A program made the position numbers and the translations under genes. Shown here one piece after another: positions 3,051 to 23,500 of a DNA stretch of 64,000 nucleotides (position 1 is its first letter; each line of letters starts with the position of its first letter). Below the pieces are notes generated by a model. The model was not told where the DNA came from, did not search any database, and saw only the letters and a program-made list of their open reading frames with translations. The stretch is taken from the NCBI GenBank assembly GCA_950097015.1, contig CATNEN010000011.1, positions 5,518,001 to 5,582,000 on the forward strand. The letters are read 5' to 3'. The stretch comes from Macrostomum hystrix. Lineage: Eukaryota; Animalia; Platyhelminthes.

Positions 3051-3439
3051 AACTCGGGGTTGAACGGTGGCTCAGGTGGATCAGGATTTCTTACTGGCTG
3101 ATTGACCGTTCTTGTTTCGCTACTTGGCTGTGCTGTTATTTCCACTGACGGAGACACATTAGGTGAGGGTTCAAACACTGCAGCACCAGAACCTGCAGCA
3201 ACTGCAGCACTAAAACCTGCAACAACTGCAGCATCGAACGGTACAAACGGATCGCTGCGTTTAACAGCTGCAGCTAGTACGGCTAAACTGTCAGTACTGG
3301 GGTCCGCACGCGACACAGGTGTTGGATCTCCTATTCCATGAGTCGGGTCGGATCGCTGACGCAACTCTTGCGGCTGGGTCAGCAGCGGCAGAGTTACCAA
3401 CAGAACCAATGGCAAAGGGCCGAATGCTAGACGAAACAT
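3051..3439 (-). CDS. Probable first coding exon of a secreted or membrane protein (signal peptide plus A/S/P-rich region)
   Basis: ATG, hydrophobic N-terminus (FRLAFGPLPLVLLVTLPLLT); the ORF ends at a GTGAG donor (GAGTT|GTGAG). Downstream exons not resolved. Confidence 0.45.
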
Positions 3440-10731: not shown

Positions 10732-11038
10732 CGAAGGAGGGAGACGGGAAGGAGGGAGACGGGAAGGAGGGAGACGGGAAGGAGGGAGACGGGAAGGAGG
10801 GAGACGGGAAGGAGGGAGACGGGAAGGTGGGAGACGGGAAGCAGGGAGACGGGAAGGATGGAGACGGGAAGGATGGAGACGGGAAGGAGGGAGACGGGAA
10901 GGAGGGAGACGGGAAGGAGGGAGACGGGAAGGAGGGAGACGGGAAGGAGGGAGACGGGAAGGATGGAGACGGGAAGGAGGGAGACGGGAAGGAGGGAGAC
11001 GGGAAGGAGGGAGACGGGAAGGAGGGAGACGGGAAGGC
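10732..11038. repeat. 15-bp polypurine minisatellite (GGAGACGGGAAGGAG)n, copy A
   Basis: Direct tandem units; source of the EGDGK, PSFPS and ETGRR ORFs. Confidence 0.95.
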
Positions 11039-11301: not shown

Positions 11302-13527
11302 TCAGAACAATTGAATTATTTGTTGCCGCCTCACACCAACACCGTTGTATTCTTCTTCTTCTTCACCTTTTGTCGCCTTACGGCGTGGTCACTCGGGGAC
11401 AACGAGTTAGTGGCAAGTCTTCTGGTGCCGGGCCATGTTGGTGGCCGACAACATCCTCCCACAGTTCACGCAGGCTTTCTGTTTCGCTCGATACTTTCTG
11501 GCGGGCTGAGTTATCTGAAGGCTTGTGTTCGCGGCCTTGTCTCCGCAAGCCCTCTTATGCCTCGCTCGGTTTGTTTTCGAGACGGTTCTGCCGCACTCAT
11601 TGCATCTGTAGCTGCTCGCGTTAATCTCTTCCTCACCTGTGCATACCTTCATGTGGTTCTTCAGCGTTGCTTCTTGACGGAAATTCTTCTTACATCTGTT
11701 GCATGTGAACACTACCGGATCCTCTACTCTGCGGTGGAGGCGTTTCTGGTGGATCGTGAGGCCTGCCTTGTTCTTGCATATTTTGCCGCAATCCTCGTAT
11801 TCGCAGCGAAACTCATTCTTGTCCGGTTCAGTCACGGTCTGGTTGCGCTGTGCTAGTGTTGCGTTCTCAGGTCCTTGTTTCGGTGCCTTCTTGCCTTGTT
11901 GGCTCTCCCATCGTGCTAGATGGTCTCTTCTCGCGTTCACCCAGGCTCTCCATGTGTCTCTTTTAATCGCTCTTCTTTCGACATCCTGTCTCTCCACGCC
12001 GCCTTCTCGAAGCAGTTTGTGCCAGTAAGATCTGGTGTTGTTCTTCTTTGTTCTTCTTTTCGGGATCTCTTCGAGTCTCGTGAGCCATCCGAGAACCGCT
12101 CTCTTTGTTTGACGCTCATCTGGCATACGGATGACGTGTCCGATTCTTCGTAGATGTGCTATCTCCACCTTCAGTCGGATCGAATTTATCCCCAGTTCAT
12201 TTCGTACATCTTGCATGTTGACGCCTTTCTGTTGCATTTCCCGCAGTGGTTCTGTGGTCCGGGAGCACCAAATGTGACGATACGCTTTGTCGATGAACTT
12301 CTGCAGAGTGCGTATCTCTGTGTTCATAAAAGGACGCGTGGACGCGTTGAACAAGAGTATGCTCTCTACGCATGTCTCGACAATTTTTGCTTGTGTTGTT
12401 TTCTTCATTTTGCTTTTGAAAAGTCTTTTCCTGACGGTAGCCCAGCCTTTGGCCGCTTTTTGGATCCTCTGGTTTATGTCGAACTTGCGATCCAGCCATG
12501 ATCCTAGCATCCGGACTTCGCCTCCGTCCTTCGTTCCGAACGTGAGGATTTCTTGTTTGTCATCGTTGGTTTTTTCCTCGTATTTTTCCATGATTTTTTT
12601 TGTGCTTACCAGTGCTGTTTCCAGCTCTATTCGGTTTCCCAGTAGTGTGGTGTCGTCCGCGAAGAGCGAGCACGTGAACTGGTGAGTCTTTGTTTCCGAG
12701 TTGTATTGTGCGGTGCGTTGAGGTGGGAGGGAGTGGCCCGGTAGCCAAGTCCAGCCGATGCCTACCTCGCAGTCTCCCGCTGTAGTGTTTTGACGCTCTT
12801 TTTCGCACTCTCGCGCCTCACACCAACACCGTTGTATTCGTTTCCATCGTTGTCTCCTTCGTCCTCGTCAACTGGAAGGTCTTCGACTGCGACATTCATT
12901 TCGGGCTTGAGCAGGTTGTGCAGGGCCACACAGCAGCGGATGACGTGGCAAGCGAACACAGGCTCCAATGAGTTTGCACCGGTTGCGAGGAACCGCAATG
13001 CTACTCGCACCTGCTGCGACGGCTCCAGAGCAGCATTCGATCGAGTGGGGTGTTGCAGTCGATGTCCAATTGCCGTGCATACTGTCTCCACGTCCTCCTC
13101 TGTCAGTCGAAATCGGGATTGATGATTGACAGGGCGATCTTCAAATTGAAAATTTATCCGCGGTTTGAACATTCGTGGTCGCCTCGCAGCGTTCTGAGGC
13201 TGATCCTCCTCGTCTGAGGAGTCCGACTCGAACATAGTGACTCGATTAGTGACTATGACTGCCGTAAGATCATGACTGCCGTATGACTGTCGAGTTACAA
13301 GCTCGACAAGAAGAAATATATTATTCAGACTATTCATCTCCAGACGGCTGCTCACTCATCCAGGCGCGCTGTCTATGAAACAAACCGCTTGTAACTGGCA
13401 CTTGTCACTACTCGCTTGTCACTTGTTGGAGCTTGTAACTTGTAAAAATCCTATGTAACGAAAATCGCTGCTCACTGCTCACTTGTCACACTTGTAACTC
13501 TGACAAGTGCTCTATGAAACGGGGCCC
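11302..13527 (-). mobile_element. Internally deleted PIF/Harbinger element (HARBI1-like nuclease lacking the DDE core), interrupted by the LINE
   Basis: ATG at 13235; FRL..ALEPSQQVRVALRFLATG joined directly to VIRCCVALHNL; C-terminus GVRRQQIIQLF* resumes at 11352-11302 beyond the LINE. Harbinger-like terminus GGGCCCCGTTTCATAG at 13512-13527; the other TIR was not found. Confidence 0.75.
11353..12813 (-). mobile_element. 5'-truncated RTE-like non-LTR retrotransposon (RT C-terminal half plus four C2H2-type zinc fingers)
   Basis: The frame of ORF 11407..12591 is open upstream to the FADD catalytic motif (12652-12663). HLRRIGHVIRMPDER..K motif; Zn fingers such as CEYEDCGKICKNKAGLTIHQKRLH; (GAA)n 3' tail; 26-bp TSD at 11327-11352 and 12814-12839. 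Confidence 0.9.
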
Positions 13528-13651: not shown

Positions 13652-14112
13652 CGAAGGAGGGAGACGGGAAGGAGGGAGACGGGAAGGAGGGAGACGGGAA
13701 GGTGGGAGACGGGAAGCAGGGAGACGGGAAGGATGGAGACGGGAAGGATGGAGACGGGAAGGAGGGAGACGGGAAGGAGGGAGACGGGAAGGAGGGAGAC
13801 GGGAAGGAGGGAGACGGGAAGGAGGGAGACGGGAAGGAGGGAGACGGGAAGGAGGGAGACGGGAAGGAGGGAGACGGGAAGGATGGAGACGGGAAGGAGG
13901 GAGACGGGAAGGAGGGAGATGGGAAGGATGGAGACGGGAAGGAGGGAGACGGGAAGGAGGGAGACGGGAAGGAGGGAGACGGGAAGGAGGGAGACGGGAA
14001 GGAGGGAGACGGGAAGGAGGGAGACGGGAAGGAGGGAGACGGGAAGGAGGGAGACGGGAAGGAGGGAGACGGGAAGGAGGGAGACGGGAAGGAGGGAGAC
14101 GGGAAGGAGGGA
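13652..14112. repeat. 15-bp polypurine minisatellite (GGAGACGGGAAGGAG)n, copy B
   Basis: Same unit, same variant run and same ~50-bp left flank as copy A. Confidence 0.95.
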
Positions 14113-14585
14113 GCCACTAGTGTGCCCGACGCTAGACTGATCACCTTGGTAACCGTGCTGATTTCAGTCGACCTACCGCTTATTGGCATCTCTCTCATAT
14201 TGGCTGTCAATTGGCTGTTGTAAGCTTAAATCATAAGCGGAAGAGTGAAAAAAGCATTAGAAAGGACTTTTATGCCTATCTTATGATAATTTTAGCATGT
14301 CCAGGTGTCATTAACATGCCGCATCTTCTGAGTTACTTTCAAAGCTTATACATTTTTGGATTGAAATCTAAATTGAAATTCAAACGAAATAGTGTATGAC
14401 GGGATGTCAGATGTAAAATAACGAAATGACGAGTCGGCCCGCGACACTTGTCTATGGTAATACGAGTATAGAGGCATAGCGAGAGAGAGACGCGTCTAAG
14501 TAGAGACGGCCATAGTACTCGTGCTCCTCTGTAGCGAATCTGCTCTGTTAAAATTGCTTGCACCAGATCTGACGCAGACTTCAAG

Positions 14586-17500
14586 ATGAGACAATTCCAA
14601 GAAATCAAAGAAGAGAAAGTGCTTCCTAACTGGACACCACAGGAACTGGAGAAAATTGCCAAGGTGTATAATAAGCGAAAATCGTCCATTTATCATCTGG
14701 ACCTAGAGTTACCAGAAAACCGCTCTAGGAGCCGTTCGGAGACCTCGGAAAGTACTTGTACAACTGAAGTGAACTCGATGCAAAATTGGAAATTTTCCTT
14801 CACTTGCCTTAGCGTCCTGAAAGAGCCAGAAAATATTTTGTCAGCTCTCACACTGTTGTCAATGATTCTTGCTGTGCCAGTTGGCCTTTCGGTTAGCCGA
14901 CTGAAGCCCAGAGAACTGACTGTCGAGCTTATCGGCTTACCGGGTGAATTGCTGATGAACATGCTTAAGCTGATGCTTTTTCCGTTGCTTTTCTCATCAC
15001 TAGTGTCCGGTACGTGCTTGCTCGTGCTTTTCTATTTGATCATTTTTACTTTTAGCTCAGAACGTTAGTGAGCAAGCAATCGAACAACAGAAGGGTTTGG
15101 GAGTGGGAGAAAACTTCTACTGATTAGCGGGGGTTGTTGAAGCCAATTATAAATGAGCAGGGTTAGAGGTAAGAGAAGACACTGCCTGAGGACAGGGGTT
15201 GTTGCGGCCAATTATAAATGAGCAGGGTTAGAGGTAACAGAAGACACTCCCTGAGGACAGGGGTTGTTGCGGCCAATTATAAATGAGCAGGGTTAGAGGT
15301 AAGAGAAGACACTGCCTGAGGACAGGGGTTGTTGCGGCCAATTATAAATGAGCAGGGTTAGAGGTAACAGAAGACACTCCCTGAGGACAGGGGTTGTTGC
15401 GGCCAATTATAAATGAGCAGGGTTAGAGGTAAGAGAAGACACTGCCTGAGGACAGGGGTTGTTGCGGCCAATTATAAATGAGCAGGGTTAGAGGTAAGAG
15501 AAGACACTGCCTGAGGACAGGGGTTGTTGCAGCCAATTATAAATGAGCAGGGTTAGAGGTAAGAGAAGACACTCTGTGAGGGCAGGGGTTGTTGCAGCCA
15601 ATTATAAATGAGCAGGGTTAGAGGTAAGAGAAGACACTCTGTGAGGGCAGGGGTTGTTGCAGCCAATTATAAATGAGCAGGGTTAGAGGTAAGAGAAGAC
15701 ACTCTGTGAGGGCAGGGGTTGTTGCAGCCCATTATAAATGAGCAGGGTTAGAGGTAAGAGAAGACACTCTGTGAGGGCAGGGGTTGTTGCGGCCAATTAT
15801 AAAGCATCCAGGAGTTAGGAGCTCAATATTGCGACCTTAAAACGCTGTAAAAAGTGCCCAAATAAGTGTCTAAAATAGACCTTTCACTTTAAATTATAAC
15901 GCCAGGGTTGTCTAATCCGAACATAAAATCTATAAAACGGATTAGCGTCTTCATGGTGTTTTACTTCTTCTTTTCGTGCTTGGCTGCTGTGTTAATCGGC
16001 ATCATTGTAACGGTCATTATTCAGCCAGGCAACAATAACATAAAGAACCAACTCGCGAGAAGAGGCTACGTGACCGATAAAAGCAAAAGCGGCGAAGTGC
16101 TTGAACATATTCTGGACCTAATACGGTGCGTTTCGAATGGTCTTATTAAAATTTGCTGTTAGGAATATATTCTAAATCATATCGAAGCATCGTTTGATTC
16201 TCGCTGCAACTAGAATAAAATAGCAATCCAAATCCCTTGATACCTTCTGCATGGAGCAGATTAGCAATCCAAATCCCTTGATACCTTCTGCATGGAGCAG
16301 ATTAGCAATCCAAATCCCTTGGTACCTTCTGCATGGAGCAGATTAGCAATCCAAATCCCTTGATACCTTCTGCATGGAGCAGATTAGCAATCCAAATCCC
16401 TTGATACCTTCTGCATGGAGTAGATTAGCAATCCAAATCCCTTGATACCTTCTGCATGGAGCAGATTAGCAATCCAAATCCCTTGATACCTTCTGCATGG
16501 AGCAGATTAGCAATCCAAATCCCTTGATACCTTCTGCATGGAGCAGATTAGCAATCCAAGTCCCTTGATGCCTTCTGCATGGAGCAGATTAGCAATCCAA
16601 ATCCCTTGATACCTTCTGCATGGAGTAGATTAGCAATCCAAATCCCTTGATACCTTCTGCATGGAGTAGATAAGCAATCCGAATCCCTTGATACCTTCTG
16701 CATGGAGTAGATTAGCAATCCAAATCCCTTGATACCTTCTGCATAGAGTAGATTAGCAATCCAAATTCATTGAAGCTCACAATATAGAGTAGACTAAGAA
16801 TAGATTAACTTACAACTTATAATATCATTTGATTCTCACTGCATAGAGTGCCCCATTTCAGAAACATTTTCCCCGATGGCTTACTTCAAGCAGCATTTCG
16901 CGAAAATAATTTAACTGTAAAATACGGCAATGACACCACCAATGGCTTAGTGCAGATCGAGAATAGACTTGTTACAGGGATGAACTTGCTGGGTAAGTTT
17001 TAAGTCTACTTATGTGCTCAGTTTCATAATTGGCCTGTCACTAAGGCGCAACCCAACCCCAATGTCAGCCTGCGTCAGTTTCTCAATTTTCTTCGGTTTG
17101 GTGATTAAACGCTTGTCAAATCAGACGCGAGACCTGATTGACCTGATGGTTGCCATCAACGACACTTGCTGCTCGATGGTGCGGGTCATAACTTGGTGAG
17201 TACTCGGTGCAATCTAATGACCAAAAAAGCAACTGACCCAATCTCGAACTGACCCAATCTCGAACTGACCCACTCTCTAACTGACCCCATCTCTAACTGA
17301 CCCAATCTCTAACTGACCCAATCTCTAACTGACCCAATCTCTAACTGACCCACTCTCTAACTGACCCAATCTCTAACTGACCCAATCTCTAACTGACCCA
17401 TCTCTAACTGACCCAATCTCTATCTGACCCAATCTCTAACTGACCCAATCTCTAACTGACCCAATCTCTAACTGACCCAATCTCTAACTGACCCATCTCT

Positions 17501-20500
17501 AACTGACCCAATCTCTATCTGACCCAATATCTAACTGACCCAATCTCTAACTGACCCAATCTCTAACTGACCCATCTCTAACTGACCCAATCTCTATCTG
17601 ACCCAATCTCTGACTGACCCAATCTCTAACTGACCCAATCTCTAACTGACCCACTCTCTAACTGACCCAATCTCTATCTGACCCAATCTCTAACTGACCC
17701 AATCTCTAACTGACCCAATCTCTAACTGACCCAATCTCTATCTGACCCAATCTCTAACTGACCCAATCTCTAACTGACCCAATCTCTAACTGACCCAATC
17801 TCTAACTGACCCACTCTCTAACTGACCCAATCTCTAACTGACCCAATCTCTAACTGACCCATTCTCTAACTGACCCAATCTCTAACTGACCCAATCTCTA
17901 ACTGACCCAATCTCTAACTGACCCAATCTCGAACTGACCCAATCTCGAACTGACCCACTCTCGAACTGACCCAATCTCTAACTGACCCAATCTCTAACTG
18001 ACCCATTCTCTAACTGACCCAATCTCTAACTGACCCACTCTCTAACTGACCCAATCTCTAACTGACCCACTCTCTAACTGACCCAATCTCTAACTGACCC
18101 AATATTTAACTGACCCACTCTCTAACTGACCCAATATTTAACTGACTCAATCTCTAACTAACCCATTCTCTAACTGACCCACTCTCTAACTGACCCAATC
18201 TCTAACTGACCCAATCTCTAACTGACCCAATCTCTAACTGACCCAATCTCGAACTGACCCACTCTCGAACTGACCCAATCTCTAACTGACCCAATCTCTA
18301 ACTGACCCATTCTCTAACTGACCCAATCTCTAACTGACCCACTCTCTAACTGACCCAATCTCTAACTGACCCAATCTTTAACTGACCCAATCTCTAACTG
18401 ACCCACTCTCTAACTGACCCAATCTCTAACTGACCCAATATTTAACTGACCCACTCTCTAACTGACCCAATATTTAACTGACTCAATCTCTAACTAACCC
18501 ATTCTCTAACTGACCCACTCTCTAACTGACCCAATCTCTAACTGACCCAATCTCTAACTGACCCAATCTCTAACTGACCCAATCTCGAACTGACCCAATC
18601 TCGAACTGACCCACTCTCGAACTGACCCAATCTCTAACTGACCCAATCTCTAACTGACCCATTCTCTAACTGACCCAATCTCTAACTGACCCACTCTCTA
18701 ACTGACCCAATCTCTAACTGACCCAATCTTTAACTGACCCACTCTCTAACTGACCCACTCTCTAACTGACCCAATCTCTAACTGACCCAATCTTTAACTG
18801 ACCCAATCTCTAACTGACCCACTCTCTAACTGACCCAATCTCTAACTGACCCAATATTTAACTGACCCACTCTCTAACTGACCCAATATTTAACTGACTC
18901 AATCTCTAACTAACCCATTCTCTAACTGACCCACTCTCTAACTGACCCAATCTCTAACTGACCCAATCTCTAACTGACCCAATCTCTAACTGACCCAATC
19001 TCTAACTGACCCAATCTCTAACTGACCCAATCTCTAACTGACCCAATCTCTAACTGACCCATTCTCTAACTGACCCACTCTCTAACTGACCCAATCTCTA
19101 ACTGACCCAATCTCTATCTGACCCAATCTCTAACTGACCCAATATTTAACTGACTCAATCTCTAACTAACCCATTCTCTAACTGACCTAATCTCTAACTG
19201 ACCCAATCTCTAACTGACCCACTCTCTAACTGACCCAATCTCTATCTGACCCAATCTCTAACTGACCCAATCTCTAACTGACCCAATCTCTAACTGACCC
19301 AATCTCTAACTGACCCATCTCTAACTGACCCAATCTCTATCTGACCCATCTCTAACTGACCCAATCTCTATCTGACCCACTCTCTAACTGACCCAATCTC
19401 TAACTGACCCACTCTCTAACTGACCCAATCTCTAACTGACCCAATCTCTAACTGACCCATTCTCTAACTAACCCAATCTCTAACTGACCCACTCTCTAAC
19501 TGACCCAATCTCTAACTGACCCAATATTTAACTGACCCACTCTCTAACTGACCCAATATTTAACTGACTCAATCTCTAACTAACCCATTCTCTAACTGAC
19601 CCACTCTCGAACTGACCCAATCTCTAACTGACCCAATCTCTAACTGACCCAATCTCTAACTGACCCAATCTCTAACTGACCCAATCTCTAACTGACCCAC
19701 TCTCTAACTGACCCAATCTCTAACTGACCCAATCTCTAACTGACCCATTCTCTAACTGACCCAATCTCTAACTGACCCACTCTCTAACTGACCCACTCTC
19801 TAACTGACCCAATCTCTAACTGACCCAATCTTTAACTGACCCAATCTCTAACTGACCCACTCTCTAACTGACCCAATCTCTAACTGACCCAATATTTAAC
19901 TGACCCACTCTCTAACTGACCCAATATTTAACTGACTCAATCTCTAACTAACCCATTCTCTAACTGACCCACTCTCTAACTGACCCAATCTCTAACTGAC
20001 CCAATCTCTAACTGACCCAATCTCTAACTGACCCATTCTCTAACTGACCCACTCTCTAACTGACCCAATCTCTAACTGACCCAATCTCTATCTGACCCAA
20101 TCTCTAACTGACCCAATATTTAACTGACTCAATCTCTAACTAACCCATTCTCTAACTGACCTAATCTCTAACTGACCCAATCTCTAACTGACCCACTCTC
20201 TAACTGACCCAATCTCTAACTGACCCAATCTCTAACTGACCCAATCTCTAACTGACCCAATCTCTAACTGACCCACTCTCTAACTGACCCAATCTCTAAC
20301 TGACCCACTCTCTAACTGACCCAATCTCGAACTGATACATAACCAACCCAAACCACAACTGACTCAAGCATATGAGTCGTGGAAAAATTCGTTGAGTCGT
20401 CGCCATTTAAACTTTGATCTAACCTCTCACCTCACTAAACCAAGGTACACACCGGTTGGGGTGTTCTCGTTACTGATGAGTACGTTACTGATATCGAAAC

Positions 20501-23500
20501 CGGTACCATATTCTAAAGAAGAATTTCAACTATTTGGCTACTTCATACTGACTGTGTTTATTGGCTTTGTATTGCAAACCTGCCTTCAGGCATTGTCCTA
20601 CCTGGTTCTGGTTAACAGGAATCCGATCAACATTTTTCTGGGCACCTTCCAGGCTTGTGTGACTGCTTTGGGCACCGCATCCTCAGCTGCCACCCTGCCG
20701 ATCACTTTCCATCGCACGGAGGACAACCTGGGCATTGATAAGAGAATCACTAAAATTGTGCTGCCAATTGGTATAACAGTAAACAAGAACGCGGCTGCAA
20801 TGTACATTGCTGCGGCTGGGGTTTTCGTGGCACAGCTTAATGACATCAGACTTACCCCTGTTCAGATAATAACCGCCAGGTGAGAAGCACTCTGTCACCT
20901 GTTAGACCAGAGTGTCACCTGTTAGACCAGAGTGTCACCTGTTAGACCAGAGTGTCACCTGTTAGACCAGAGTGTCACCTGTTAGACCAGAGTGTCACCT
21001 GTTAGACCAGAGTGTCACCTGCTAGACCAGAGTATCACCTCTTTGATTGGAGTGTCACCTGCTAGACTGGAGTATCACCTGTTTGACTGGAGTGTCACCT
21101 GCTAGACCAGAGTATCACCTGTTTGACTGGAGTGTCACCTGCTAGACAAGAGTATCACCTGTTTGACTGGAGTGTCACCTGCTAGACCAGAGTATCACCT
21201 GTTTGACTGGAGTGTCACCTGTTAGACCAGAGTTTCACCTGTTAGACGAGGGTGTCACCTGTTAGATGAGGGTGTCACCCGTTAGACCAGAGTGTCGCCT
21301 GCTCTAATGTCGCCTGTTAGACTGGAGTATCACCTGTTAGACTGGAGTATCACCTGTTAGACTGGAGTATCACCTGTTAGACTGGAGTATCACCTGTTAG
21401 ACTGGATTACCACCTGTTAGACTGGAGTATCACCTGTTAGACTGGAGTATCACCTGTTAGACTGGAGTATCACCTGTTTGACTGGAGTGTCACCTGCTAG
21501 ACCAGAGTATCACCTGTTTGACTGGAGTGTCACCTGCTAGACCAGAGTATCACCTGTTTGACTGGAGTGTCACCTGTTAGACCAGAGTTTCACCTGTTAG
21601 ACGAGGGTGTCACCTGTTAGATGAGGGTGTCACCCGTTAGACCAGAGTGTCGCCTGCTCTAATGTCGCCTGTTAGACTGGAGTATCACCTGTTAGACTGG
21701 AGTATCACCTGTTAGACTGGAGTATCAGCTGTTAGACTGGTGTATCACCTGTTAGACTGGAGTATCACCTGTTAGACTGGAGTATCACCTGTTAGACTGG
21801 AGTACCACCTGTTAGACTGGAGTATCACCTGTTAGACTGTAGTATCACCTGTTAGACTGGAGTATCACCTGTTAGACTGGATTACCACCTGTTAGACTGA
21901 AGTATCACCTGTTAGACTGGATTACCACCTGTTAGACTGGATTATCACCTGTTAGACTGGAGTATAACCTGTTAGACTGGAGTATCACCTGTTAGACTGG
22001 AGTATCACCTGTTAGACTGGAGTATCACCTGTTAGACTGGAGTATCACCTGTTAGACTGGTGTATCACCTGTTAGACTGGAGTATCACCTGTTAGACTGG
22101 AGTATCACCTGTTAGACTGGAGTATCACCTGTTAGACTGGAGTATCACCTGTTAGACTGGAGTATCACCTGTTAGACTGGAGTATCACCTGTTAGACTGT
22201 AGTATCACCTGTTAGACTGGAGTATCACCTGTTAGACTGGAGTATCACCTGTTAGACTGGATTATCACCTGTTAGACTGGAGTATCACCTGTTAGACTGG
22301 AGTATCACCTGTTAGACTGGAGTATCACCTGTTAGACTGGATTACCACCTGTTAGACTGGAGTATCACCTGTTAGACTGAAGTGACAATGCAAACATTGT
22401 TTCAATAGACTAATCTCTACCCAGCAAATTAATCGCTATATTAATCCGCAGCTTTCTAGCAATGATTGCTTCTGTTAACACGCCTGGCGTACCTGGTGGC
22501 GTTGCATCTGCAATAGGAGTTGTGAGCTCTGCTTTCGGCTGGCAGGGTTTTGAAGTTTTTTGGATTTTGCCAATTGACTGGCTAATGTGAGAGTCACATT
22601 TTCTCTTTTATTAAACTTTCTACATAAGTTTTATTATGATTTTCCTAAATTGGGAACTCTTACTTGAGTCCTTTCTTCAGTTTTGCTTTGTAGAAAACTC
22701 CTGTTTAAGGATCGTTTGTTTTTTATGCAGTGACAACACTTCCAAGTGACTTAATATTGTATTTGTTTTCCCTTATAACCTTCAAGATCTTAGCACCCTG
22801 TGACCCTGTGTGATTATCAGCAAAACCGTGGCCAGAACATTCCTTCCTTGGATTGTGACAGCTGCTGCGAAGAGCTCGGATCCACGTCTCATAAGATGGA
22901 GTTCCTCCTTATCGTAGTACCCCTAAGTACCCTAGCTCTAACGCATAGACAATCTATGCAATGTGGCATTTATTTTCTAACTCGTGGATCTCAGCGAATC
23001 TGAATGGATTAAGTCTCTGTCTAACTGGTAGGTATCTGTCTTGCAGTGTTAGTAACAAGCTGTCACTACAATCGCGTACCTCAAAAGCTGACTTACGAGT
23101 AAATTATGCCGTGTCTACACAAATTATAACCCCCAAAATTGCAGAGATAGATTCGGCACAGTCGTCAATGTCATGGGCAATGTATTTTGTGCAGCGATTC
23201 TGCAGCACATTTGCAAATTTGAAGAAGAGGGCCCCTCGGAGCCCAACAGCGACATGTCTGAGGAGCTTAAAGAAATTGACGAAGGTAAGTTAACAAGAAA
23301 GAGTACTTTTAAATAAGAGTACTAGTTAACAGCTTCTTCCAAATTCTGTAGTCTTTGGATCTTTTTTATGATCAAACTGTACATCTGTCTCATCTAACTA
23401 TTTGTCTGAAACCTTTAATTTTTAGAAGCGCGAGTTATTTACTTTTCTGATGAATACATAAAATAAATGACCCCGATGCTTTCATGTAACCCCTGCTATT

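What the first reader, a model, noticed from the sequence alone, without database searches (positions are those of the whole stretch)
20782..23200. SLC1/EAAT homolog with rewired cation and substrate sites (NMDGT to NKNAA, R397 to G, D405 to N)
Seen: LPIGITVNKNAAAMY aligns to GltPh LPLGATINMDGTALY, giving M311K, D312N, G313A, T314A. DWLIDRFGTVVNVMGN gives R397G and D405N while D390, D394, T398 and N401 are kept. HP2 reads NTPGVPGGV. Established: R397 binds the side-chain carboxylate (Cys/Thr in neutral ASCTs); D312 and D405 are Na+ ligands; Asn at 405 occurs in bacterial H+-coupled members. Inference: a Na+-independent or H+-coupled neutral-solute carrier, possibly with K311 acting as a built-in cation, or a channel/non-transporting member. 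The ORF is intact over 8 exons, so this does not look like decay.
Basis: partly seen in the sequence, partly recalled or inferred. Interest (0 to 1): 0.72.

Follow-up and report, generated by a model that had tools for sequence, protein, structure and literature searches.

The report
Divergent glutamate-transporter-family gene, sodium sites rewired
This is a real, intact, spliced and expressed gene of the glutamate/neutral amino-acid transporter family (SLC1) in which nearly all charged ion- and substrate-binding residues are replaced. It is the minor, most derived copy of a small family of fast-evolving close copies, and the striking lysine is peculiar to this copy.

Summary
The window encodes an SLC1/EAAT homolog on the + strand, 14586-23284. 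TM7 reads NKNAA where the family has NMDGT. TM8 reads DWLIDRFGTVVNVMGN, which gives R397G and D405N in GltPh numbering. The EAAT proton acceptor is Ile and Na3 ligand S93 is Cys.

I found 7 coding exons with canonical splice sites and an intact 537-codon frame.

Assembled contigs from four public runs carry the exon 4-5 and 5-6 junctions and leave the intron flanks uncovered in three of the four, so the gene is transcribed and spliced.

The same runs hold at least four close copies, 6-11% different. Most contig depth reads N-M-N-A-A and one copy reads N-L-N-A-A. The window's Lys copy is about 9-14% of the depth. D312N, G313A and T314A look shared by the family. K311 is specific to this copy.

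Listed differences among the copies are 28 non-synonymous to 11 synonymous, a pN/pS of about 0.87. The protein sits on a branch three times the median length with no supported sister.

My best reading is a lineage-specific SLC1 carrier for neutral solutes that has lost canonical Na+/H+/K+ coupling. Relaxed constraint is a serious rival.

The scan has noted four other divergent SLC1 genes elsewhere in this genome.

The parts
14586..15009 (+). Coding exon 1: N-terminus, TM1-TM2. The start codon is taken as the first ATG of the open frame; Met65 at 14778 is an alternative.
   Evidence: Pfam SDF profile positions 2-54. Donor gtacgt.
15906..16125 (+). Coding exon 2: TM3, with YFFFSC at 15962-15979 where the family has YYMTTT (Na3 ligands T92 to S, S93 to C).
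16862..16992 (+). Coding exon 3: extracellular TM3-4 loop region.
   Evidence: AG..gtaagt.
17069..17195 (+). Coding exon 4: TM4c-TM5 region. Its 3' end is joined to exon 5 in RNA contigs.
   Evidence: loose end ...GGTCATAACTT before 20444 in X1, X4, X5 and X9.
20445..20879 (+). Coding exon 5: TM5 end, TM6, HP1 (SSAATLP, 20680-20700) and TM7 with NKNAA.
   Evidence: E=2.2e-31 to EAAT2; SDF 109 bits; both junctions seen, exact-match contigs in three runs.
20782..20796 (+). The N-K-N-A-A codons (GltPh 310-314). The Lys codon AAG is at 20785-87. Most transcripts in the runs read ATG (Met) there and one copy reads TTG (Leu).
22452..22586 (+). Coding exon 6: HP2 (NTPGVPGGV, 22477-22503) and the start of TM8 (D390 at 22576-78). 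Very divergent.
   Evidence: loose end CTTTCTAGCAATGAT... after 20879.
23145..23284 (+). Coding exon 7: TM8 with D394, G (at R397) 23155-57, T398, N401, N (at D405) 23179-81, and the C-terminal tail. It may run on to a stop at 23314-16.
17231..20335 (.). Intron 4 is 96% a 16-base minisatellite (about 194 copies).
20895..22383 (.). Intron 5 is 95% a 20-base minisatellite (about 75 copies).

Best explanation
The gene is one member, the most derived and least abundant in the RNA contigs, of a young, fast-evolving group of SLC1 (glutamate/neutral amino-acid transporter family) copies in this animal. Earlier scan notes call the animal a flatworm of the genus Macrostomum. I could not verify that.

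Shown here:
- The fold-defining parts are kept: HP1 SSxxTLP, N310, the HP2 tip GVPGG, D390, D394, T398 and N401.
- The ion-coupling residues are replaced. D312 (Na3) and D405 (Na1) are both Asn, the EAAT proton-acceptor Glu is Ile and S93 is Cys.
- The arginine that binds the substrate's side-chain carboxylate (R397) is Gly, and T314 is Ala.

Inferred:
- The protein still binds an alpha-amino acid through D394 and N401.
- It does not select acidic side chains.
- It cannot use the canonical 3 Na+/H+/K+ cycle.
- It would therefore act as a Na+-independent or weakly coupled facilitator or exchanger of neutral amino acids or similar small zwitterions.
- The Lys at 311 arose on an already D312N background. 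Its role is open.
For: - Family membership and residue equivalences.
- Intact 7-exon frame with canonical splice sites.
- Transcription and correct splicing in runs from at least two studies: exon 4-5 and 5-6 junctions as loose ends, zero depth on the intron flanks in X1 and X5, and contigs with 0 differences to the window over 20744-20867 in X1, X4 and X5.
- Family-wide state N-[M/L/K]-N-A-A. The only changes listed in the codons for N312, A313 and A314 are synonymous. None of the listed contig differences is an indel or an isolated stop. The HP1 block 20581-20706 is almost invariant among the copies.
- Published effects of the single changes. D367N in EAAC1 (GltPh D312) mainly lowers Na+ affinity of the empty carrier. 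Its title says it inhibits cycling (PMC2151618 and its reference Tao 2006). D454N leaves homoexchange intact.
- T92-hydrophobic, M311L and D405N mark bacterial H+-coupled members, and R397 and D394 set acidic versus neutral and dicarboxylate specificity (PMC12668577).
- N312 variants are kept in many other lineages, and NKN occurs in teleost EAAT3-like proteins, so such cores can be maintained.
Against: - Differences among the close copies are near neutral: 28 non-synonymous to 11 synonymous, pN/pS about 0.87, codon positions 14:10:15. They are densest in TM7, normally the most conserved segment.
- The protein's end branch is 2.58 changes per site against a median of 0.87, and it has no supported sister.
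- The HP2 exon no longer finds SLC1 structures by sequence. ASCT1 scores only E=4.3.
- G313A is unique among 70 relatives.
- No ortholog above about 50% identity turned up in two large protein searches.
- No transport data exist.
Confidence: 0.5

Rival explanations
1. Relaxed constraint. The copies are redundant duplicates, perhaps from a recent genome duplication, that are still transcribed while drifting. The window's copy, the most derived and least abundant, has no transport function or is losing it.
For: - pN/pS is about 0.87 among the copies, with an even spread over codon positions.
- At R90, I110 and K114 of exon 5 the window's copy differs from the majority. The majority state (C, T, M) matches the usual family residue at R90 and K114 and a residue seen in relatives at I110.
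- The window's copy is about 9-14% of summed contig depth at 20786.
- The terminal branch is very long.
- SLC1 exon relics lie just upstream in the window.
Against: - The 1.6-kb frame is intact across 7 exons with all splice sites canonical.
- No listed difference in any copy is an indel or an isolated stop.
- HP1, N310, D394, T398 and N401 are retained on a branch long enough to have erased them if unconstrained.
- The HP1 block is nearly invariant among the copies.
Confidence: 0.25
2. The Lys at position 311 puts a fixed positive charge into or beside the Na+ sites. It replaces a bound Na+ and makes this copy a constitutively 'primed', Na+-independent carrier. Alternatively it takes over from R397 as the partner of an acidic side chain.
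For: - The M311 side chain points into the substrate pocket next to Na2 in solved structures (PMC12668577).
- Four of the relatives fetched here also carry Lys at 311: teleost P0071 and P0073, mite P0063, and this gene. All four lack Asp at 312, and three of the four (not P0073) also lack the proton-acceptor Glu.
- In the 70-row alignment the Lys-311 rows are three (P0071, P0063 and this gene), and K311 with non-Asp 312 is 3/3 against 11/67. Fisher p=0.007, or 0.03 without this gene; not corrected for phylogeny.
Against: - The Lys is specific to this copy. The more abundant copies have Met or Leu with the same N312, A313 and A314, so the family does not depend on it.
- Near-neutral divergence in TM7 means the Lys could be a tolerated or damaging change.
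- No structural model of the joined protein could be made here.
Confidence: 0.13
3. A non-transporting SLC1 derivative: a substrate-gated or leak anion channel, or a sensor or accessory subunit in heterotrimers with canonical copies.
For: SLC1 proteins carry an uncoupled anion conductance and work as trimers (established knowledge). The ion-coupling residues are lost while the scaffold and hairpins persist.
Against: Nothing in the sequence speaks specifically for a channel. The substrate-backbone ligands D394 and N401 are kept, which fits binding and transport as well.
Confidence: 0.1

Closest known systems
ASCT1/ASCT2 (SLC1A4/5), neutral amino-acid exchangers
   Same: SLC1 fold. A small residue stands where EAATs have the side-chain-binding Arg (Thr/Cys in ASCTs, Gly here). 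The proton-acceptor Glu is absent (Gln in ASCTs, Ile here). D394 and N401 are kept.
   Different: ASCTs keep NMDGA and Asp at 405 and are Na+-dependent. Here D312, G313, T314 and D405 are all replaced. Identity to an ASCT2-like relative (P0040) is about 33%.
Bacterial H+-coupled glutamate/dicarboxylate carriers (GltP/GltT/DctA type; 'ExtH' in PMC12668577)
   Same: D405N is shared. A Leu codon at 311 occurs in one close copy of this gene.
   Different: Those keep D312 and, for glutamate carriers, R397, and have a hydrophobic residue at 92. Here 92 is Ser, D312 is Asn and R397 is Gly. This gene branches among eukaryotic SLC1 proteins.
Uncharacterised teleost 'EAAT3-like' proteins (Electrophorus XP_035386270.1 NKNGS; Neogobius A0A8C6WQ30 NKNGT; Chanos XP_030635045.1 NMNGT) and a mite EAAT2-like protein (Oppia XP_054154881.1 HKTGT ... 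GN)
   Same: Lys at 311 together with loss of Asp 312, and, except in the Neogobius protein, of the proton-acceptor Glu. The mite protein also has D405N.
   Different: Only 31-34% identical to this gene and placed in other clades, so the resemblance is convergent. They keep G313, and several keep R397 and D405.
Other divergent SLC1 genes noted by this scan in the same genome (s1-313518 KGDGS branch, s1-268124, s1-300531, s1-270707)
   Same: Same family and same genome, each described as having rewired ion and substrate sites.
   Different: Different loci and different motif sets. I could not compare sequences, so any relationship to this gene is untested.

Membership tests
SLC1 / DAACS (Pfam PF00375, Sodium:dicarboxylate symporter family) | Significant match to the family profile over the transport core | tested here: met
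   Exon 5 alone scores 109.2 bits against a cut-off of 27.9. Five further exons (1, 2, 4, 6, 7) hit successive profile segments from 2 to 386 in order. PDB hits to EAAT2, EAAT1, EAAT3, ASCT and GltPh run down to E=2e-31.
SLC1 / DAACS | Hairpins HP1 (SSxxTLP) and HP2 (G-[IV]-P-x-G tip) and the TM8 D..D..T..N pattern | tested here: met
   SSAATLP, GVPGG and DWLID-R-F-G-T-V-V-N are present.
EAAT-type Na+/H+/K+-coupled acidic amino-acid transporters | NMDGT in TM7 (Met 311, Asp 312, Thr 314) | tested here: not met
   NKNAA. Close copies read NMNAA or NLNAA.
EAAT-type Na+/H+/K+-coupled acidic amino-acid transporters | Arg in TM8 that binds the side-chain carboxylate (GltPh R397, EAAT3 R447) | tested here: not met
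   Gly at 23155-57.
EAAT-type Na+/H+/K+-coupled acidic amino-acid transporters | Asp at the Na1 site (GltPh D405) and the proton-acceptor Glu (EAAT3 E374) | tested here: not met
   Asn and Ile.
ASCT-type Na+-dependent neutral amino-acid exchangers | Small residue at 397 with intact NMDG and D405 | tested here: not met
   The small residue is met (Gly), but NMDG and D405 are not kept.
Bacterial H+-coupled SLC1 homologs (signature in PMC12668577) | T/S92 to hydrophobic, M311L, D405N | tested here: not met
   Ser at 92, Lys at 311 (Leu only in one close copy), Asn at 405: one of three.
Any SLC1 transporter | Measured substrate flux and ion dependence | not testable with these tools
   Needs expression and uptake or current assays.

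The most novel reading that the evidence does not exclude
SLC1 carriers can repeatedly evolve a tethered positive charge. After Asp 312 (and usually the proton-acceptor Glu) is neutralised, Met 311 becomes Lys, whose amine stands in for a bound Na+ or for the lost R397. The same D312N-then-M311K order is suggested here, where NMN copies sit beside the NKN copy. It is also suggested in teleost EAAT3-like proteins, where NMNGT and NKNG[ST] members occur, and a third case exists in a mite. If so, this gene would be a natural example of a Na+-independent, self-primed elevator transporter.
Probability: 0.15. Interest if true: 0.75.

Novelty: new variant of a known kind. Interest (0 to 1): 0.45.

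Why it matters
How SLC1 transporters gain and lose ion coupling is an active question. PMC12668577 shows that coupling can be lost with the binding sites intact. This gene is the opposite natural experiment: a eukaryotic, expressed SLC1 protein that keeps the fold and the amino-acid backbone ligands but has neutralised both Asp Na+ ligands, the proton acceptor and the substrate Arg.

The animal also holds sister copies that differ at position 311 (Met, Leu or Lys). That offers a ready-made swap series for testing what this position does. If the copies turn out to be drifting duplicates, the finding is ordinary gene-family turnover.

Tried and rejected
- Word search with exon 5 and the exhaustive representative search: no relative above about 50% identity, and none with N-x-N-A-A except a convergent beetle fragment (P0060 NTNAS, 28% identical). 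No ortholog set for dN/dS could be built.
- Exact-product look-up of the exon ORF: not on record.
- Search for tandem paralogs in the window: only one gene, plus relic exon pieces upstream.
- Testing the 'flatworm/Macrostomum' label from earlier notes with a 394-aa retroelement ORF: only unnamed hits. The label stays unverified. The best named exon-level and full-length hits are flatworm proteins (Protopolystoma, Schistosoma, Trichobilharzia), which is weak support.
- Literature: no paper found on such variants in flatworms. The vertebrate SLC1 phylogeny paper does not discuss motif variants.
- I laid reads only on exon 5 with its unique flanks, because the introns on both sides of exon 5 are long minisatellites.
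- Misassembly is rejected: exact-match RNA contigs occur in three runs.

Full report
**What is there.**
The + strand between 14586 and 23284 carries a seven-exon gene of the SLC1 family.
- Every exon is bounded by AG..GT, and the joined frame is open for 537 codons.
- Exon 5 (20445-20879) alone scores 109 bits against Pfam SDF. The other exons except exon 3 hit successive parts of the same profile.
- Exon 5 aligns to human EAAT2 at E=2.2e-31.
- The last exon ends in phase 1 at a gtaagt. If that donor is not used, the frame stops at 23314-16, with AATAAA at 23462.

**The motifs.**
- TM7 reads N-K-N-A-A at 20782-20796 where relatives read N-M-D-G-T.
- TM8 reads D-W-L-I-D-R-F-G-T-V-V-N-V-M-G-N. 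D390, D394, T398 and N401 are kept, R397 is Gly and D405 is Asn.
- The EAAT proton-acceptor Glu (GltPh Q318) is Ile.
- The TM3 Na3 ligands read S-C instead of T-T/S.
- The HP2 tip GVPGG is kept, but the rest of that exon is so changed that it no longer finds SLC1 structures by sequence.
- In a 70-row alignment of the nearest full-length relatives:
  - G313A and R397G are unique to this gene;
  - Lys 311 is in 3 rows;
  - non-Asp at 312 is in 14 rows;
  - Asn 405 is in 3 rows.

**Expression and the family of copies.**
I laid contigs of four public runs on exon 5 with its unique flanks. The introns on both sides of exon 5 are long minisatellites, so I did not lay more.
- In all four runs the contigs break at the 5' exon border. 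They continue with the end of exon 4 before 20444.
- In X1, X4 and X5 they also break at the 3' border and continue with the start of exon 6 after 20879.
- The intron flanks have zero depth in X1, X5 and X9.
- The runs therefore hold spliced RNA, whatever their labels say.
- Contigs identical to the window over 20744-20867 occur in X1, X4 and X5.
- Many other contigs differ by 6-11%. Three different continuations appear after 20477-20479, all in frame. At least four close copies or alleles are therefore expressed.
- At the Lys codon, most depth reads ATG (Met). The contig with both 20785 and 20786 changed reads TTG (Leu).
- The window's AAG accounts for 8.7 of 100.5 (X4), 10.4 of 80.4 (X5) and 892 of 6426 (X1). 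Contig depth is a crude measure.
- In the codons for N312, A313 and A314 only synonymous changes are listed. Ten further variants were not shown by the tool.
- At three positions the majority differs from the window: Cys where the window has R90, Thr at I110 and Met at K114. Cys and Met are the usual family residues, and Thr at 110 is seen in relatives.
- So the window's copy is the derived one.

**Constraint.**
- Of the 39 listed coding differences, 28 are non-synonymous and 11 synonymous, over 257 and 88 sites. That gives pN/pS of about 0.87.
- Codon positions are hit 14:10:15.
- The differences are uneven. The HP1 block 20581-20706 has two, and TM7 (20761-20840) has 23.
- No listed contig difference is an indel or an isolated stop.
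- In a maximum-likelihood tree with 50 relatives, the gene's end branch is 2.58 changes per site against a median of 0.87. No supported clade holds it.
- The best full-length identity is 33-35%.
- Neither the exhaustive representative search nor the word search found anything closer. The subfamily looks confined to this lineage as far as those libraries go.

**Mechanistic reading.**
Established knowledge:
- D312 with T92, S93 and N310 forms Na3.
- D405 forms Na1.
- R397 pairs with the substrate's side-chain carboxylate, D394 with its amino group and N401 with its alpha-carboxylate.
- M311 contacts the substrate next to Na2 (PMC12668577).
- D367N in EAAC1 mainly lowers Na+ affinity of the empty carrier, and D454N leaves homoexchange intact (PMC2151618).
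- T92-hydrophobic, M311L and D405N mark bacterial H+-coupled members.

Inference:
- The backbone ligands are kept and every charged coupling residue is neutralised, so the protein should still bind an alpha-amino acid.
- It should not select acidic ones.
- It should not run the canonical cycle.
- A Na+-independent or weakly coupled facilitator or exchanger is the most economical proposal.

The near-neutral divergence among copies makes relaxed constraint a serious rival.

**The lysine.**
- Lys 311 also occurs in teleost EAAT3-like proteins (Electrophorus NKNGS, Neogobius NKNGT) and in a mite protein (HKTGT).
- All of these lack Asp 312. All but the Neogobius protein also lack the proton-acceptor Glu.
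- Both here and in teleosts, NMN relatives exist beside the NKN ones. That suggests D312N came first.
- This is a small, phylogenetically uncorrected sample (Fisher p=0.007, or 0.03 without this gene).

**Context.**
- Earlier notes of this scan list four other divergent SLC1 genes elsewhere in this genome and call the animal a flatworm (Macrostomum).
- I did not test those claims. My one attempt to name the organism gave only unnamed hits.
- The best named hits of this gene are flatworm proteins.

- The joined protein was built only inside sandbox scripts, from window coordinates, for local BLAST, alignment and the tree.
- It was never typed into a search or fold tool.
- Database searches were made exon by exon, by reference.
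- Searching and folding the joined protein were left out.

Noticed in passing
window 14113-14220 (+): An orphan HP2-like SLC1 exon lies about 370 bases upstream of this gene's first coding exon. It is 64% identical over 36 residues to a Schistosoma SLC1 protein, reads AVNWLL where the family has AVDWLL, and has a GTAAG donor in the usual phase. Its 5' half is overrun by a 15-base minisatellite. It is not similar to this gene's own HP2 exon, so it looks like a relic of another, more canonical paralog.
   Followed up: partly
window 3071-3170 (+, two frames): A weak, frame-shifted resemblance to an SLC1 TM8 exon (YWLIDRSC ... DGDTLGEG; E about 0.3). It may be a second decayed SLC1 relic, or chance.
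   Followed up: no
window 15010-22451 (introns 1, 2, 4, 5): Each of the four longest introns of this gene (the 558-base intron 6 has none) is mostly one private minisatellite: units of 65, 41, 16 and 20 bases covering 75%, 75%, 96% and 95% of the intron. The whole window holds more than 25 such arrays.
   Followed up: partly
window 10733-11037 and 13653-14113: The same 15-base minisatellite (GAAGGAGGGAGACGG) occurs twice, separated by a retroelement-like ORF (11407-12591, minus strand, zinc fingers; relatives carry reverse-transcriptase domains) and a second transposase-like ORF (12762-13355, minus strand). It looks like one array split by insertions.
   Followed up: partly
relatives P0013, P0071, P0073, P0066, P0083, P0128, P0132: Teleost fishes carry a set of 'EAAT3-like' proteins with NMNG[TS] or NKNG[TS] in TM7, E instead of D at 390, and C, N or R at 397. 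I found no paper that mentions these motif variants.
   Followed up: partly
runs X1-X3, X7: X1, X2, X3 and X7 are labelled 'DNA?'. X1, the only one of them laid, holds spliced contigs of this gene with no intron coverage and Nextera adapter tails, so it is RNA-derived.
   Followed up: partly
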